64,000 nt of DNA from Guillardia theta CCMP2712 (lineage: Eukaryota; Protista; Cryptophyta). Below, piece by piece: positions 52,676 through 60,400 of the stretch. The position numbers and the translations under genes were made by a program. Position 1 is the first letter of the stretch; each line of letters starts with the position of its first letter. The notes beneath the pieces are model-generated. The model saw only the letters and a program-made list of their open reading frames with translations, made no database searches and was not told where the DNA came from. The stretch lies in contig NW_005434650.1 of assembly GCF_000315625.1 (NCBI RefSeq), positions 130,736 through 194,735 of the forward strand, written 5' to 3'.

Positions 52676-54675
52676 TCAACATGTAACTGCCTGCATATCA
52701 TCATCCTGAGAATCCATCAGAATCTCTTCGTCTTGGATCATCAAACGCTTCATCTCGTGAATTGGTTCTTGATCTATGCGGTGTGAAATCAAATCATCCG
52801 GCATCCCAGGTTCTGGGTGAATAGCGAAATCAGATTTTGACACGTGATCTGTTATCTGTTGTTCCATCTCCTTGTCGCAAGCTTCTTTTGCGTTCTCGGC
52901 ATTGTTCCTTCTATTTACTGCTATCGTACTGCTCGCACTGATCAGATCGTCGCTCGTCTCATCTGGCTGTCTCTCTCGACAGCTTTCCTCCAGCTCGTCT
53001 GCAGTTGAAAGTCGTCAGAGACTCGCTCAATCTCTTCAGCCATCACCATCATCAAACGTGCTTGTCTGCTCGGATGGGACGGTCACAGTCTCCGGACCAT
53101 CTTCCTTTCCTTGCCTTTCAAGGTTCGCCAGCTGGTCCAATAGGGTCAACTTGGATCATCAATGCAAAATCAACATACATGTCCAACATCGTTGGTGACT
53201 TTGAGAGAAAATTGAGCTTGTGATGGGTGATAACATTTTGAGACAGCGAGAACAAAGATGGAACAATTCTTGGCACTGTTTGTGACACCCCCCACTGCTG
53301 AACTCAGGAACTCGCTGATGAAACCTCCATGAGTTACGATTAGAATTCGTTTCACTCTGTCATCGCTCACAGCCACCAAACGTTCAGAATTCGTGAAGTT
53401 TTGTTCGAATGAGCTTCTTGGACTGGAGGCATATCCCCGATGAATCATCGGCCCATAGTTACTGAAACTGGGCAAAGCATACTTGTGCAAAAGTTCCTTC
53501 ATGAAGGATCTTGCTCGAAATCGTACATCTTCCCAATTTTCTCCTCCTGGAGGTCTAAATTTTCTGTGAGGCATTCCCGAGATTCTTGTCATGTGCTCAA
53601 TGTAACCAATCTGATATCCTTCATACTGCCCTGCAGCCTTTTCTCGCAACCTGCTATCGGTGAAGGCAGGAATTCCGGGGGGCAAGGCTCGTAAAATGAA
53701 ATCGGCTGTTTGCTTTGTTCTGTTTAAATCGCTCAGATACACAGCGGTAAATTCGATTTCTTTCAATCGTTCAGCAACAAGTTGTGCTTGTTTACAACCG
53801 TTGGGTGTAAGCCCAGAAGAGTTCTGACCTGCGATGGTTCTGCTCTTGTTCTCAGGGGTCTCTCCATGTCTGACCAGGTACAACTCGAGCGAAGCACCTG
53901 GTGGGTACATGCTCGGCACAGCTTCCGGTGAGGGCATCGATCCTTGCATTGGAGAGGCTCTTGACGAGCGTACGCCGAACTCTTTGGCTGAAATCACTGG
54001 AGAGCTCGTGGGGCTTGCTGTGTTGTGCTTTGGGCTTTTAGTTGGACTGAACTTGGCAGGAATACTGAGGTCAAGAGCTTTCTTCACAAACGATTCGTGG
54101 CTCGTGTCCACAGGAGCCTTCTTTGGGAATTGAACACTCGTGAAAGTTTGTCTCGATGCGTACATGTCTCGATAGTCTTGCGAATGCTGCTGAGAATAGA
54201 GTTGCCACTGCATTGGTCGGACTTGAGGAGCTTGCGAGATCGAAGCGTGTAGATTCGTTGGCTGCATCAGATTCTTCCCCGAAGCAAGAACCGAAGGTCC
54301 GATTCCGAAGCTGTAACTCCATGCCTGCTGTTGTTGAGCCAGATGCTGACCTGTGCTTCCCATTGAACTGTACATCCCTTCACGCACCTGTCCTCCGACA
54401 TCCCTTGGCAACTCTCGGACCACTGTACCTCTTCCATTCCCACCTACTGCTACTCCTCCTCTTCCTCCCACTCCTGCACCTACTGCCACGACTCTTCCTC
54501 CCACCCCTGCCGTTCCTCCCCTTCCCCCTACTCCTGCAACTCCTACTCCACCTCCTATTCCACCCCCTATTCCTCCCAAAACTATACCTCCCATTCCTCC
54601 TCCTCCTCCTCCTCCTCCTCCTCCCATTCCCCCTCCTCTTTCCCCGCTCCCTACCCGTGCATGGCTCGCATGCAT
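52676..54675 (-). CDS. Histidine phosphatase (phosphoglycerate mutase/TIGAR-like) with a long low-complexity N-terminus
   Basis: LYLVRHGETPEN, SDLNRTKQTA, RLREK, GGENW, ILIVTHGGFI. Gly-rich then Gln/Ser/Pro-rich N-terminus. Start uncertain. Confidence 0.88.
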
Positions 54676-55068
54676 GACAGCTGAACGGTGAAAGAGGAAC
54701 TTGAACTTTTAGTTGAATAACTAAAAAATATTAATATGCAATATGAGTACAACTGCCACTACCGTTAAACATCGGTGTACCAAAATAGATAATCCCAAAT
54801 ATATTGTAAATGAAGTTACTCATAGCTCATGTTAAAATAAGTTTTAAAGCTGTGCCATTGCTTCAATTCGAAGGGTCGTCATGTTGTACCAGGACGAGGG
54901 GGTGGGGTGGGGGTGGCTTGGGGGTGGGGGGGTAGATTACTGATAGAAGAAAAGAGGCGTGAGGTATCGAGCAGGGGTAGGAGGAAGGACAGACCAGGGG
55001 TGGGTTCAGGGAAGCAGCAGGGGTACCTTAGTAGGGGTACGGGAGGAGTTGCGAAGAGACGCGAGGCA

Positions 55069-57338
55069 ATGGGGAGGGTATCGGAGCCGCTGATGGGGCA
55101 AGACAAGGAGAATGAAAGGAAGGCCAAGAAGCAGGTGAGAAACACGAAGAAACAGTACTCCTCGCACTCGTCTATCTCTTCTCTCACTCGTCTTTTGCGC
55201 ATCTCCCCAGATGTTGAGCCCATGTTTCATTCACGCCTGGTCTTGACACCTTCGCAGACTCTGCCATTCATTTTTCTAGTGACGTCGCTTTTCCTTGTCG
55301 GGATTGCCTGTGCCTTCATGATCAGTTGGGACCGATCATGGTCGGATAGAAGTATTGAAGTTTTACAGTCGTTCGATCCAGACAATCTCTACAAGGTAAC
55401 CAGAATGCAATCTGGAAGCTTCCTGTGTTGATTTGTTACAGTACAACAAGATTGAAGATTATGATCATCCAAATCGCATCGACAAATACAACTGCTTGTT
55501 TTCTGGGTGTGATGAAAGCGAGGACAAAGGACTTGTAAGCAAAGGTAGAACCATATAGATTGCTTGAAATGTACTCGAACGACTTGATCAAGCTGAAGTG
55601 TTTTACAGTACAAAAGCTTTCCAAGGCGCTCACAAAGCTGATGAAGATGCAAGACAAGTTCAAGCAGCAGCTTGACAAGCCGACGAAGTCGATGATAGAA
55701 GTGGCGCAAGGAGAACCAGGACGACGTGGTCCTCGTGGATATCGCGGTGCTGTGGGTCCACAAGGATATCCGGGCGACACCGGGCCACAAGGGAGAGCAG
55801 GCGTGATGGGCAACCCTGGACTTCCTGGAGGAATGGGCCCGAGAGGCCCCCGAGGTTTTCCCGGGGAAGCTGGAAGGCCTGGCAGGCAGGGAGTGCCGGG
55901 GATCGAGGGCCCTCCAGGCCCTAGAGGACGGCAAGGCAGGGAGGGACCCGGCGGAAAGACAGGGCCCCCAGGCTATCAAGGAGAGAACGGCCCTGCTGGT
56001 CAGCCAGGCCTGCGAGGGGCTCCAGGTGAGCAGCTTTGAGCCTGCTGGGCGATGAAGTGATGAATGCAAATGGCAGGTAGCAATGGCGTCTCCTTGCAAG
56101 GACCACCGGGACCCCGGGGAATCCGTGGAGTGCGAGGGCCGACGGGTCAGGTTGGTCCTATCGGCAAGCGAGGTCAGCAAGGGCCTCCAGGTAGTCTTGG
56201 TGGTACTGGCAGCCAAGGCAATATCGGAGTTCAAGGTCTGGCTGGAAAAGATGCCAAGCAAGCACCAACCCCGCAGTGCACAGGGTTGCAAACCAATGAC
56301 GGAGAATCGATTTGCTGTGGCCTGTCCCGCACATCATGGAGTTCGTATTATGATTCCTCTACAATGAGAATCGACACTTCAAGTTGCAAATTTACAGGAA
56401 ATGTGAGATACTTCACTACACTTCAGGGTTCAAGTTATACAGAGAGACTCTTTGGCATTTCGAACATTTACGATCCAACTGCGACAGGATTTAGACTTTA
56501 CTTGTACACTCAAACTGGTCACATCAGTCTCTGGGGTTGGTATGCAAACGCTTGGCGATATAAAGTACGTTGGTGTGGCGTGGGGAAGAGTAACGGTCCT
56601 CGAGTTCCAACGGGATGCTGCGGGACAGACTCAGCATATTGGTATAATGGATGGACTTGGGATAAGACACTAAACGCAAAGGCTTGCGACATCAGAGGTA
56701 GTAAAACCACCTGGATCACAGCGGTTGAAGGGTTCAGACAGTCTGGCATCCAAAAGCTAACTGGAATGAGCGCTGGAACAGTGAATGGTGCTAGTAGCTA
56801 CTACGTCGCCATCTCACTGGCATATTCTTCCAATTCGTATTGGGGCCAGCCTTGGAATGTGTACGGATGGAGCAATTGGCGACTGCGGAAAGGTCAATCT
56901 GACGCGCTTGAACCTCGTTTCTGCCTCTTTGGAGACTCATTCCCCACTGGGGACATGCGACTGCTTCAGCATGAGATCAGACAGGACGAGTTTCCATGTC
57001 AGGGAATGAGGTTGATAGAGGAGAATGTCGTCAAGACAAACAAGGCTCAGATCTGCTGTGGGACTTCCGACAGCACATGGAAGGTGATGAATGGCTACCT
57101 GATGAAGGACGTGGATACTACCTCTTGCAACTTCGATGATTCCAATGCCAAAGTCATCTACATGACCAGTCTTGGAGGGGACAACAACATTGAATTGGTA
57201 ACAGGAGCAGCAGCTTATTCCAAGAGCAATAAGAATGGTTTTACTGTCCACCTTGCTTCTCTTTACAGTAATCAGCAAAATTATGCAAAGCGGTATAATT
57301 GGAAGATTGAGTGGTGTGGTATTGGTGAGAGACGTTGA
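55069..57338 (+). CDS. Type II membrane collagen-repeat protein with three C-terminal Cys/Trp-rich repeats
   Basis: Basic N-terminus, single TM helix (LPFIFLVTSLFLVGIACAFMISW), short coiled coil, 37+17 Gly-X-Y triplets, three repeats each starting CCG. Introns at ~55135-55257, 55396-55441, 55545-55608 and 56026-56076. Confidence 0.9.
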
Positions 57339-57477
57339 GAGCGTATGACATTGGAGGAAGAGAGGTAATACTTGGCAACGTACATGGTAGCTGGGTGTAT
57401 AACTTTTCACGATACTATAGTAAAAGCAATGTGAAACCAGTCAGCGTAATCCCATCAAATGATGCAGATATTTTCAC

Positions 57478-60400
57478 CTAGCGTCTCGGCTTGCCCCTGA
57501 CCTTCTTCCTGCTCTGATCCTTTGGGGTGCCGCGTACCTGCAGGTCAAAGTGAAGGTGCTGCTCATGCTGTCAGGAGCACCTCGATGCCCTCATGCGCGA
57601 GCGTCTCAAAGGCCTCGAGCTGCAGGGGGTTACGGTCAAGAGCGCAACAAGAAGCATCAAGCAGACCTGTGCGTCGCCGAGAGACTGAGCAAACCTGCAT
57701 CCAACACGCGTCACGAGACTCAAGACTCGCGCCGACAAGTCGGACGAGCTAAGATTACCTCTTACCCATCCGCCTGCCTTTCAACAAGTTACTTAGCGTG
57801 GGGCCGCTCTGTTCCTGCAGTCGCCTGCTCAGAGGCGTAAAGGAAAGACTTTTGAGACCATTCTCCTTTGCACGTGCTCGGAGTGCCTTAAGCTCGCGTT
57901 CAACTGCGACGCATCGGTGAGGAGCAAGGAATGGTTTGATCCGAGACCCCCAAAAGATTCGAGATACCTGCTGAGCAAGTTCGTGGCGGACATCCTCGTA
58001 AGTCTTGACAAAGTCCCTTCGCACCCAATCAATTCCATTTTGCACACCACTCTTCGCATACTCCGTTGCTTTGCTCTCCTGAGGTTTTGGAAAGAGACTT
58101 CGAACATACTCTGTGACATCGACCCCTGATGTGATGGAATCAAGAATCTGAGTCAAGAATGTAACAAATCTCTTAAGGCCTCGATGTCATCTTCAGGACC
58201 TTCTTCGCTTCTTCGCTTGATTTTGCAGCTTTGCGGAACCACAAGACAGCAGAGCTTCGATTTTCAGTTACCCCGATTCCGCTCCAATATCTGATTCCGA
58301 TCTGCAGTTGCGAGTGGACACAACCGCTCTTGGCTGCCTGGAATAAACTACCAAGTTATGCAAGGAGGAAGCGGGAGAGGACCAGGGAGAAGGAAGAGGA
58401 GGGATGAAGATCTCCGGGACCTGCAAGAACCAGTATGCTGCTTTCTTGTTGTGTCGCCGTACGCCTAATCCGATAGAGTACAATAATGCCAGATTATACT
58501 GTGACTCGAGAAGACCTTGTCTGTGTAATTATCAATGCAGCAAACAAGCCAAAGCAAACAAACTTCGCTGCGATCTTGAACCACTTGCAGGCCAAAACAA
58601 TGTCTCGTTTGCAGCCTTGACCCTGCAAAGGGAAACTGAGGAGGAACACATTGCAGACGAGTGTACCTCTTGATAACAGACAGCGAGATTGTGTTTCGCT
58701 TCCAATATTCCCTCAGGGAACTTCACATTACCATTGGCAGCCAACTTGTACCAAGCAAAGGCCTAACTAATCTGTAAGAGGCGATAGGAGTGCAGGGAGA
58801 TTCAGTGCAGACAAACAGACATAGCGGAAGGAGCAGATAGTGCAGTAAGACACGTTTGTGTAAGAATCACCATCTTATCATTTCTTGGCAGACCCACTCC
58901 AAGTTCATAATATCGAGCAATCGCCGTTTGACACTCGCAATCGCCGCTTGCCGCAGCCTTCATAAGAAAGCGACAACCATCTACAACGTCTTGGTGAGTC
59001 CGGTTTCCATTGATCAGCCTTTGTCCTAGTTCTCTGCATGCCACAGAGCTACCGAATTTCAGCCCAGAAATGAATAAGATGGCTGCTACCTTCCCGATTC
59101 AGCCAAGTTCTCCAACCTCTTCATTCCCCTTTCCATTCTCTGTAAGTACTCTTCACGGCCCAGTTTTCCTGATTGATGTCAGTGAATCTTTCAGTCCATC
59201 GCCCCTCCCACTTCGTTGTATCACCTTTCTTGTACATGGCGTCAGCAGTCCTTGTGGACCTGATCAGCTTTGATTCCATCTCGTGCTCTGGTTCACCTGA
59301 GTCTGATTTACTGTCCGAACTGTCTGAGCGATCACATCAAGTCAGCTCTGCAGCGAGAGATAGACGGTCTGGGAACCAAGAGGAGGAGGAGACGGAGAAG
59401 GGACTCTTGTCAAGACCGTCTTATGCTTATCTACAAAGATCAAGCGGAATCCCCTGGGCAATGATGATGCCAACTTCACTTGATATTTCTTGGGCCCAAC
59501 AATGTAAACCTGGGAAATCAAATGAGGATCAGGATGAAACAAGATCTAGCCTAGTACATCCGGACACTCATGAAATCTTTCTAGAATGTTGGCGTCTGAT
59601 TCGTTGCAGTCAATAATTTGAACTTCAAGCGGCATGTCCCCAATCAATCTGTGGAGCAGGTTCGACGAGAAACATCTCCTGATGAATTCACTTCACCATC
59701 TGTCGGGTTAATCGCTTGCTCGCTCACCTTCCTGCTTCATATGAGAGAAGGTCCGAGTCCTCCTTTGATGGGCCCCAGTGCTCGTCTAAGACTACTTGAT
59801 ATGGCAGCCCCTCCTTCAGTTGGCTGGCACTGCACAGCTCCTCTACCATCTGGATATTTGAGATCGATGATACGACCTCGTTGTCTGTTTCATTAACAAG
59901 GAGGTAATCGCCATCCTTCTCGTACATATCGCTGTCCCTCAACAGGTCCTCATCATCAAAACTTTCGTCTTCTGCCTCGCTGTTCTCTTTCAGATCTAAA
60001 GCCTCCGCTAGTGGGTGGTTGGGCTTAACACTCGTGACCCTCTTTCTCAACATCTGCAGCTCTTTCTCGCTTTGCGAGATGCTCTCTTCAAGAGATGCTA
60101 AGTGTTCATATTTGTCCACCTTGTTGCTCCTCCTTGATGAAGACTTGTTCTTCAGGCCATGCAGAGCAAACTCTTCCTGTCCTCCAACCAACATGCCCCA
60201 TCCTCCAACCTCTTGGGCAGCCTTGTCATTGTCTGAGATGTGGGATGGCATGGATTCTAAGTTGAAGAGAGCTGATTCGTTGTATGATGAAGAGGATTGG
60301 TGCCCCACATCTTGAGATACGTACGCATGATGACGCGATTTGGTCTCTTGCTCGTCCTGCATTGTCTGTCGATCCTTCTTTTGTTGCCATCGTTTCTTCG

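What the first reader, a model, noticed from the sequence alone, without database searches (positions are those of the whole stretch)
55069..57338. Membrane-anchored collagen with triple lectin-like head: a collectin/scavenger-receptor-like architecture in an alga
Seen: basic cytosolic N-terminus, one TM helix, a short Cys pair and coiled coil (QKLSKALTKLMKMQDKFKQQL), an almost uninterrupted Arg-rich collagen of 37+17 Gly-X-Y triplets, then three repeats. The repeats start at ~56311, ~56615 and ~57051; the consensus of repeats 1 and 3 is CCG-x5-W...(I/V)DT(S/T)SC.F...Y.T(T/S)L.G...G...Y....GF.(L/V).L...(Y/W)K(V/I).WCG.G, and repeat 2 is longer and more divergent. Established: TM + coiled coil + collagen + C-terminal recognition domain is the layout of animal class A scavenger receptors and CL-P1. 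Inference: the T-x-GF-x strand and terminal W recall the trimeric H-type lectin (discoidin/HPA) fold. Collagen trimerisation would then display nine sugar-binding modules on a stalk, giving a convergently evolved surface receptor for bacteria or viruses, or a periplast/flagellar surface fibre.
Basis: partly seen in the sequence, partly recalled or inferred. Interest (0 to 1): 0.8.

Follow-up and report, generated by a model that had tools for sequence, protein, structure and literature searches.

The report
Cryptophyte membrane collagen with lectin-like head
The alga Guillardia theta expresses a membrane-anchored collagen whose stalk has a fixed length and whose tip is three snail-lectin-like domains, predicted to pack as a three-fold unit, from a large and so far unnamed domain family; what it binds is untested.

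Summary
Transcript contigs from three studies join five exons (55069-55134, 55258-55395, 55442-55544, 55609-56025, 56077-57338) into a 661-codon reading frame: a basic N-terminus, one TM helix, a Cys pair, a short coiled coil, 37+17 Gly-X-Y triplets and three ~92-107-aa repeats.

The three repeats are predicted to pack as one pseudo-trimer within a chain. A collagen trimer would then carry three such heads, not nine free modules.

The repeat is not alga-specific. A profile finds 1159 protein clusters in bacteria and eukaryotes, nearly always with repeats in threes, fused to proteases, TSP1, EGF or collagen. No Pfam, NCBIfam or PHROG model covers it.

The collagen-linked, Cys-rich form is one cryptophyte clade with a stalk of 53-55 triplets. 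Sugar binding and cellular role are untested. Earlier notes of this scan describe a probable paralog and other collagen-stalked lectin genes in this genome.

The parts
55069..55134 (+). Exon 1: start codon and a 22-residue basic cytosolic N-terminus (6 K/R, 4 D/E)
   Evidence: Sequence and translation. The exon end is set by the splice joint 55134/55258 in transcript contigs of 3 studies.
55135..55257 (+).
   Evidence: Joint 'skips 123' in X1, X3 and X8.
55258..55323 (+). Single transmembrane helix (22 hydrophobic residues): the signal anchor
   Evidence: Translation. Kyte-Doolittle mean is 2.66 over 19 residues in the public model P0002. Net positive charge on the N-terminal side and net negative after the helix give a type II orientation; this is inferred.
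55324..55395 (+). Rest of exon 2: juxtamembrane segment with the FDP..LY motif
   Evidence: The motif is conserved in paralogs and in other cryptophytes.
55442..55544 (+). Exon 3: HPNRID.Y motif and the Cys pair C-x-F-S-x-C
   Evidence: The motif is conserved in P0112, P0123, P0154 and P0197.
55609..55709 (+). Start of exon 4: short coiled coil of about 3 heptads, then a V.I.V strand directly before the collagen
   Evidence: Hydrophobic positions at a 3-4-3-4 spacing are conserved in 9 homologs. No coiled-coil predictor was run.
55710..56025 (+). Collagen block 1, exon 4 part: 35 Gly-X-Y triplets plus the first base of the next Gly codon
   Evidence: PF01391 E 3e-17. Triplet count.
56026..56076 (+). 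Intron 4 (GT..AG, 51 nt), phase 1, inside a Gly codon
   Evidence: Joint in X1, X3 and X8.
56077..56093 (+). End of collagen block 1: triplets 36 and 37
56094..56099 (+). Two-residue break (LQ) in the triple helix. A break of 2 to 7 residues lies at the same place, after triplet 36 or 37, in all full-length relatives
56100..56252 (+). Collagen block 2: 17 triplets
   Evidence: PF01391 E 2e-08. Triplet count.
56253..56309 (+). Neck between collagen and head, with the first head Cys
56310..56585 (+). Head repeat 1 (92 aa, CCG...WCG)
   Evidence: pLDDT mostly above 90.
56613..56933 (+). Head repeat 2 (107 aa). It is divergent, with an inserted loop of low model confidence
   Evidence: pLDDT is 51-55 for model residues 181-200.
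56934..57050 (+). 39-residue linker with one Cys, specific to the cryptophyte form
   Evidence: Other family members have linkers of about 10 residues.
57051..57326 (+). Head repeat 3 (92 aa)
   Evidence: The single-repeat model has pLDDT 93.4.
57336..57439 (+). Stop codon and 3' UTR up to the poly(A) site
   Evidence: Loose poly(A) ends behind 57439 in 3'-end RNA reads of X21.

Best explanation
This is an expressed nuclear gene of Guillardia theta for a type II membrane collagen of 661 codons.

Proposed anatomy, from the membrane outward:
- A short basic tail stays in the cytosol and one helix anchors the chain.
- A conserved juxtamembrane segment and a three-heptad coiled coil bring three chains together. 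They start a collagen triple helix that zips away from the membrane.
- The stalk has 54 triplets with one conserved break. It would be about 46 nm long if straight.
- Each chain ends in a disulfide-rich head of about 350 residues (14 Cys). Its three repeats each fold as an H-type-lectin-like beta-sandwich and pack on each other as a pseudo-trimer within one chain.
- The trimeric molecule would therefore hold three such heads at a fixed distance from the cell surface.

Proposed function: the heads most likely bind a glycan or another surface polymer. This rests on analogy with every solved protein of this fold class, and on the way bacteria attach the same module to secreted proteases. The role would be surface recognition or tethering, for example holding the surface periplast layer or capturing particles.

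Shown: the transcript structure, the collagen, the repeat family and its distribution, and the fixed stalk length.
Predicted: the fold and the pseudo-trimer.
Inferred: trimerisation, orientation in the membrane, ligand and cellular role.
For: - Gene structure: five exons are joined by GT..AG introns in transcript contigs of three studies, and 3'-end RNA reads show a poly(A) site.
- Collagen: PF01391 matches in both collagen exons. The count is 37+17 triplets, with Arg or Pro in 24 of 52 directly counted Y positions.
- Anchor: a hydrophobic segment and flanking charges. A heptad pattern is conserved in 9 homologs.
- Paralogs: five paralogous loci in the genome have collagen upstream of the same head; four of them also show a hydrophobic N-terminal segment in the fetched DNA.
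- Fold models: head pLDDT 87.4 with pTM 0.88; single repeat pLDDT 93.4.
- Foldseek probabilities: SLL-2 0.99, HPA 0.91.
- ESM Atlas: TM 0.63-0.65 to clusters carrying PF09458 H_lectin or PF21882 Gp53-like_C.
- Whole head: it matches single-chain pseudo-trimers, namely EBV dUTPase, the PCSK9 C-terminal domain and single-chain TNF or adiponectin.
- Module family: 116 of 151 listed proteins have exactly 3 repeats and 12 have 6. Fusion partners are trypsin, matrixin, papain, TSP1 and EGF, as expected for a binding module.
- Stalk length: 53-55 triplets, with the break after triplet 36 or 37, in Guillardia, Hanusia, Hemiselmis, Rhodomonas and metagenomic relatives.
Against: - No ligand, localisation or oligomer state has been measured.
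- The Pfam H_lectin model does not match. A profile-profile comparison with three G. theta H_lectin domains is in register but not significant (P 0.036).
- The HW motif conserved in the wider family is absent from the window's repeats, and repeat 2 is degenerate. A binding site could be lost or changed.
- The pseudo-trimer rests on one monomer prediction; no multimer model could be run.
- Collagen heads usually are trimerisation domains. An arrangement in which repeats from different chains mix is not excluded.
- The joined full-length protein was never searched or folded, because the work was done exon by exon.
Confidence: 0.6

Rival explanations
1. Same molecule, but its main role is structural. 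It would act as a fixed-length tether or spacer that links the plasma membrane to the extracellular surface periplast layer or glycocalyx, and not as a receptor for foreign particles.
For: The stalk length (53-55 triplets) and the position of the break are conserved across four genera and two N-terminal subtypes, as expected for a ruler. The gene is covered in all three culture transcriptome assemblies examined. The genome holds at least 106 collagen matches at many loci, which suggests a large surface-matrix repertoire. [quoted passage not shown] 1997, cited in PMC6212826).
Against: Orthologs of animal scavenger receptors and collectins also keep their stalk length, so a fixed length does not separate the two roles. 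No localisation data exist. No known periplast protein was compared.
Confidence: 0.3
2. The head binds a protein or itself, not a sugar, and mediates cell-cell or gamete adhesion. The three-fold beta-sandwich head would work like a C1q/TNF-type head.
Against: At the level of a single repeat, the best matches are lectins and polysaccharide-binding fibre knobs, not C1q or TNF domains. The whole-head similarity reflects only the three-fold arrangement.
Confidence: 0.12
3. The anchor is cleaved or the ectodomain is shed, so the functional form is a soluble collectin-like molecule released into the medium.
For: Animal membrane collagens are commonly shed (established knowledge). The conserved juxtamembrane motif could be a processing site.
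Against: No dibasic or furin-type site is evident between the helix and the coiled coil in the translation. The hydrophobic segment is 22 residues long and preceded by a charged tail, which is typical of a stable signal anchor.
Confidence: 0.1
4. The gene is a captured viral fibre gene, from a polinton-like virus, virophage or giant virus, and not a host surface protein.
For: Collagen repeats fused to H_lectin or phage-fibre domains occur in polinton-like virus fibre proteins of protists, including cryptophytes (PMC12220804). The fold class is shared with phage fibre knobs.
Against: The gene has four spliceosomal introns and a membrane anchor, is transcribed in ordinary cultures and has paralogs at several loci. 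The context of a metagenomic relative looks like ordinary nuclear genes. No viral contig carries a close relative. No PHROG family matches, and the BFVD search gives nothing convincing.
Confidence: 0.03

Closest known systems
Animal class A scavenger receptors and membrane collectin (MSR1/SR-A, MARCO, COLEC12/CL-P1)
   Same: Type II single-pass anchor, coiled coil, collagen stalk, and C-terminal globular recognition domains carried one per chain on a trimer.
   Different: The heads are SRCR or C-type lectin domains, neither of which is found here. The coiled coil here has only about 3 heptads and lies before the collagen. The organism is a unicellular alga. There is no sequence relationship outside the Gly-X-Y repeats, so the layout is convergent.
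H-type lectins (Helix pomatia agglutinin, discoidin I/II, coral SLL-2; Pfam PF09458)
   Different: The PF09458 model does not match. Here three copies are fused in one chain, not three chains. There are two extra disulfides per repeat. Sugar-binding residues were not compared.
Trimeric receptor-binding knobs of phage and pyocin fibres (R1/R2 pyocin fibre foot, AP22 gp53 / PF21882, phi297 gp61, LKA1 gp49)
   Different: Those are homotrimers of one domain on a beta-helical or coiled fibre. There is no sequence match.
Membrane collagens of animals (collagens XIII, XXIII, XXV, XVII; ectodysplasin; gliomedin)
   Same: Type II orientation, with an N-terminal coiled coil next to the membrane that nucleates a triple helix growing towards the C-terminus (established knowledge).
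   Different: Those have several interrupted collagen domains and no lectin-like head. Here there is one stalk of fixed length with one break.
Single-chain pseudo-trimers (PCSK9 C-terminal domain, monomeric herpesvirus dUTPase)
   Different: The repeat folds and families differ. The similarity is in the arrangement only.
Other collagen-stalked lectin genes of Guillardia theta noted earlier by this scan
   Same: According to those notes, the same anchor, coiled coil and collagen chassis carries C-type lectin, SRCR, PA14, VWD/LamG or true H_lectin heads. I confirmed that true H_lectin matches lie about 2 kb downstream of collagen matches on contig C175.
   Different: The head families differ. 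Those notes were not otherwise checked here.

Membership tests
Collagen triple-helix repeat proteins (PF01391) | Uninterrupted Gly-X-Y repeats that match the Pfam model above its cut-off | tested here: met
   62.5 and 34.2 bits against a cut-off of 27.2. The count is 37+17 triplets.
Collagen triple-helix repeat proteins (PF01391) | Formation of a trimeric triple helix | not testable with these tools
   Only monomer prediction was available. The Y positions are rich in Arg and Pro, and the genome has at least 15 P4H-type 2OG oxygenase matches. Both are permissive, not proof.
H-type lectin (PF09458 H_lectin) | Match to the family's sequence model | tested here: not met
   No hit at E<=1 for the head, nor for 99 family members. 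The same model finds three other places in this genome at 34-63 bits. hhalign against those three gives P 0.036, which is not significant.
H-type lectin (PF09458 H_lectin) | Six-stranded beta-sandwich fold of HPA, discoidin or SLL-2 | tested here: met
H-type lectin (PF09458 H_lectin) | Three-fold assembly of the domains | tested here: inconclusive
   The head model has pTM 0.88 and matches single-chain trimers. Model coordinates could not be inspected, and no experiment exists.
H-type lectin (PF09458 H_lectin) | GalNAc or Gal binding at the interface between protomers | not tested
   No binding-site comparison or assay was possible.
Class A scavenger receptor / collectin layout | Type II anchor, coiled coil and collagen, in that order | tested here: met
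   Exon order in the transcripts, translations and heptad conservation. Orientation is inferred from the flanking charges.
Class A scavenger receptor / collectin layout | SRCR or C-type lectin head | tested here: not met
   No Pfam match other than Collagen. It works like these receptors but is not a member.
Unnamed three-repeat module family (this report) | Three consecutive repeats of about 90 aa that match the profile built here | tested here: met
   Repeats lie at head positions 83-174, 184-290 and 330-421 of P0001. The family has 1159 clusters. The cryptophyte Cys-rich heads form one clade with SH-aLRT 98.

The most novel reading that the evidence does not exclude
The head is a previously unrecognised, ancient and widespread single-chain-trimer form of the H-type-lectin / fibre-knob fold. 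Bacteria and many eukaryotes would use it as a portable surface-glycan binding unit. Cryptophytes mount it, alongside other lectin heads, on a family of type II membrane collagens with a fixed stalk of about 46 nm. Together these would form a collectin- or scavenger-receptor-like surface recognition or tethering system that evolved independently of animals.
Probability: 0.3. Interest if true: 0.8.

Novelty: new variant of a known kind. Interest (0 to 1): 0.6.

Why it matters
Membrane collagens with lectin heads are regarded as an animal invention for innate immunity and matrix contact. This is a transcribed algal gene with the same design. It is conserved across cryptophyte genera with a fixed stalk length, and its head belongs to a domain family of over a thousand protein clusters that no domain database names.

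If the head binds glycans, it would define a new lectin family. That family would be a single-chain version of the H-type lectin trimer, with possible use as a glycan probe. It would also give a first molecular handle on how cryptophytes build or sense their cell surface, which matters for grazing, virus attachment, mating and capture by the ciliates that steal their plastids.

The work also corrects the public gene model GUITHDRAFT_137156, which reads the collagen out of frame.

Tried and rejected
1. Word-based homolog search with the head found only the gene itself and the public model. The exhaustive profile search was needed.
2. Profile searches of PDB sequences gave nothing, apart from a chance cerato-platanin hit at E 1.2.
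3. Pfam scans of 99 family members, and NCBIfam and PHROG scans, found no consistent family.
4. I tried to build a deeper H_lectin profile for a profile-profile test. The word search with three G. theta H_lectin domains found nothing, and so did the viral contig scan. Sequence-level homology to H_lectin therefore stays undecided.
5. I followed the lead that the two ~300-aa Cys-rich repeats of Toxoplasma MIC14/MIC15 (RDF2/RDF1) might be this module. Reading the published alignment by eye shows classical H_lectin segments but not this module's motifs, so the lead is rejected.
7. I tested whether repeats 1, 2 and 3 each correspond to the same position in other proteins. Positional HMMs do not discriminate, so the result is uninformative.
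8. The juxtamembrane exon has no other copy detectable in the genome by a six-frame search, although the motif is visible in paralog ORFs.
9. The joined five-exon protein was not assembled, searched or folded. All searches were made exon by exon, by reference.
Full report
**Where and what.** The window is contig C24:130736-194735 of an 87-Mb, 669-contig assembly. The public protein model that covers the locus is GUITHDRAFT_137156 of Guillardia theta CCMP2712.

**Gene structure.**
- Runs that held about three quarters of the sampled words of the stretch looked like spliced RNA. I laid three of them, from three studies, plus one 2026 raw RNA run.
- One contig in each of X1, X3 and X8 skips exactly the same four GT..AG intervals. 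This gives exons 55069-55134, 55258-55395, 55442-55544, 55609-56025 and 56077-57338.
- The exon lengths (66, 138, 103, 417, 1262 nt) sum to 1986 nt, which is 661 codons plus the stop.
- The 3'-end reads of X21 pile up over 57054-57481 on the + strand and carry loose poly(A) after 57439.
There is an intron at 55135-55257. The exon 3/4 boundary is 55544/55609, not an acceptor at 55598.
- The public model agrees with the first three introns. It then reads much of the collagen in another frame and runs on past the true stop.
- The contigs continue into CT..AC junctions that belong to a convergent gene on the minus strand.
- One contig has 34 unmatched letters before 55063, so the 5' end is not fully fixed.
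The joined protein was never assembled, searched or folded.

**N-terminal half.**
- Exon 1 encodes 22 residues with six Lys/Arg.
- Exon 2 opens with 22 hydrophobic residues. A net negative stretch follows. This is the charge pattern of a type II signal anchor; the orientation is inferred.
- The next 60 residues hold an FDP..LY and HPNRID.Y motif and a C-x-F-S-x-C pair. Both recur in paralogs and in other cryptophytes.
- Then comes a segment whose hydrophobic positions follow a 3-4-3-4 spacing, conserved in nine homologs. It ends in a V.I.V strand directly before the first Gly-X-Y. I read it as a short trimerising coiled coil. No predictor was available.

**Collagen.**
- Pfam Collagen matches both exons.
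- There are 35 triplets in exon 4 and two more across the phase-1 intron. A two-residue break (LQ) follows, then 17 triplets.
- Of the 52 Y positions counted directly, Pro fills 13 and Arg 11, and none is Lys.
- The genome has at least 15 matches to the P4H-type oxygenase domain. Hydroxylation is therefore possible but not shown.

**The stalk is a constant.** All relatives whose collagen region is complete have 53-55 triplets, with one break after triplet 36 or 37. These include proteins from Hanusia phi, Hemiselmis andersenii and Rhodomonas sp. and several metagenomic proteins. They fall into two different N-terminal subtypes. At 0.286 nm per residue this is about 46 nm.

**The head is a family.**
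- The three repeats (56310-56585, 56613-56933, 57051-57326) align with each other and with repeats from five paralogous loci of the same genome. All five have collagen upstream, and four show a hydrophobic N-terminal segment in the fetched DNA.
- The four conserved Cys per repeat, plus two in the connecting segments, give 14 Cys in the head.
- The word-based search found only the gene itself. I therefore ran the exhaustive profile search with the 13-repeat alignment.
- That search found 1159 protein clusters at E<=1e-3, 377 at <=1e-10 and 104 at <=1e-30.
- Mapping the profile back onto the 151 listed proteins shows 116 with exactly three repeats, 12 with six and one with nine. The repeats are contiguous, with linkers of about 10 residues. 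The unit of evolution is thus a three-repeat module of about 300 aa.

**Partners of the module.**
- Pfam finds it attached to trypsin-like, matrixin and papain proteases, and to TSP1 repeats, EGF repeats, a C25 propeptide and collagen.
- Many N-termini look like bacterial lipoprotein signals.
- One member is annotated as a matrixin of Sorangium. Another is annotated as an RHS-associated protein.
- No Pfam, NCBIfam or PHROG model covers the module itself. PDB sequences give nothing.

**Consensus and the cryptophyte form.**
- The wider consensus per repeat is C.G.T...W...Y.DVDTS.CGF..TP.Y.TSL.G...HW...G...IY..T.TGFRVY...W..NW.A.
- The CCG...WCG form adds a second disulfide and lacks the HW motif.
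- In a maximum-likelihood tree of 99 modules, the 15 Cys-rich heads are one side of a branch with SH-aLRT 98. I left out no rows. The tree is unrooted and used LG+G4 with a quick search.
- Named members of that clade are all cryptophytes, apart from one fragment labelled Collodictyon.
- A 48-kb metagenomic contig carrying one member has ordinary eukaryotic neighbours.

**Fold of a single repeat.**
- The model of repeat 3, built with 140 aligned repeats, has pLDDT 93.4.
  - The rest are further phage tailspike and receptor-binding domains and the R2 pyocin fibre. Rank 50 scores 3.9.
- Foldseek ranks SLL-2 (probability 0.99), HPA (0.91) and the pyocin fibre (0.98) first, but with weak E-values.
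- In the ESM Atlas the repeat matches unnamed bacterial clusters of 93-134 residues at TM 0.77-0.85. It matches clusters carrying DUF7452, Gp53-like_C or H_lectin at TM 0.63-0.65. A language-model feature search pointed to the same families.

**Limits of the fold assignment.**
- The Pfam H_lectin model does not match the head or any of 99 relatives, although it finds three other places in this genome.
- A profile-profile comparison with those three domains aligns the expected motifs in register but is not significant (P 0.036).

**Arrangement of the three repeats.**
- The whole head, modelled with 99 aligned modules, has pLDDT 87.4 and pTM 0.88. That is high for three domains unless their packing is confidently predicted.
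- Together with the strict rule of three in the family, this suggests that the module is a single-chain copy of the homotrimer formed by H-type lectins and fibre knobs.
- A collagen trimer would then carry three pseudo-trimeric heads.
- I could not inspect coordinates or run a multimer model.

**Mechanism.** I commit to a homotrimeric type II surface protein. Its coiled coil nucleates a triple helix about 46 nm long with one hinge, and it presents three lectin-like heads.
- Ligand binding is inferred from two things. Proteins of this fold class with a known ligand bind surface saccharides. The same module is appended to secreted bacterial proteases and to eukaryotic adhesion repeats.
- I cannot decide whether the protein tethers the alga's own surface layer or captures foreign particles. 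The constant stalk length fits a spacer but does not exclude a receptor.

**Context in the genome.**
- The genome has at least 106 Collagen matches on some 50 contigs.
- True H_lectin matches on C175 lie about 2 kb downstream of collagen matches.
- Earlier notes of this scan describe other G. theta collagen-stalked genes with C-type lectin, SRCR, PA14, VWD/LamG and H_lectin heads. One note reads like a paralog of this gene. Apart from the C175 adjacency and my own paralog search, I did not check those notes.

**Literature.** Searches found no paper on this gene, on cryptophyte collagens of this kind or on the module. Polinton-like viruses of cryptophytes do carry collagen and H_lectin fibre proteins (PMC12220804). 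Against a viral origin stand this gene's introns, anchor, expression and paralogs, and the absence of viral relatives.

**Verdict.** Novelty: a new variant of known kinds, namely a membrane collagen and the H-lectin-like fold, resting on an unnamed and widespread three-repeat module. Interest: 0.6.

Noticed in passing
window 55069-57338 (public model P0002): The public model GUITHDRAFT_137156 (630 aa) reads much of the collagen in the wrong frame, skips part of repeat 1 and runs past the true stop into sequence of the neighbouring antisense gene. The transcript contigs support a 661-codon frame instead.
   Followed up: yes
window 57414-57900: The transcript contigs run on from this gene's 3' end into CT..AC junctions (57415-57477, 57536-57578, 57620-57666, 57693-57756, 57814-57857). 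A convergent minus-strand gene therefore overlaps this gene's 3' UTR, and the poly(A) site at about 57439 lies inside that gene's last intron.
   Followed up: partly
G000 C23:259797-267411 (L002, L003): Two nearly identical paralogs (collagen plus triple head) lie head to head about 2.5 kb apart on opposite strands. This looks like a recent inverted duplication. A similar tandem pair lies at C24:467-474 kb (L005, L006).
   Followed up: partly
G000 C175:3490-6297 (L013, L015): Pfam Collagen matches lie about 2 kb upstream of two true H_lectin (PF09458) matches on the same strand. The genome thus also carries a collagen with classical H-type lectin domains.
   Followed up: partly
whole genome G000: There are at least 106 matches to Pfam Collagen above the cut-off on about 50 contigs. 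Only 150 of 395 candidates were scored, so this is a lower bound. This is a very large collagen repertoire for a unicellular alga.
   Followed up: no
window 55063 (run X3): One transcript contig has 34 letters before 55063 that match nothing in 54700-57900, and no AG precedes the point. It could be an upstream 5' exon, a chimeric assembly or an adaptor.
   Followed up: no
proteins P0003-P0013: Some eukaryote-like proteins carry two or three triple modules interleaved with TSP1 repeats (P0006, P0011). P0003 has six near-identical repeats after a C25-type propeptide on a 2.2-Mb contig.
   Followed up: no
window 53170-54675 (-): The upstream neighbour is a 501-aa open frame with a Gly-rich N-terminus. 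By eye it has a histidine-phosphatase / phosphoglycerate-mutase-like C-terminal half. It appears unrelated to the finding.
   Followed up: no
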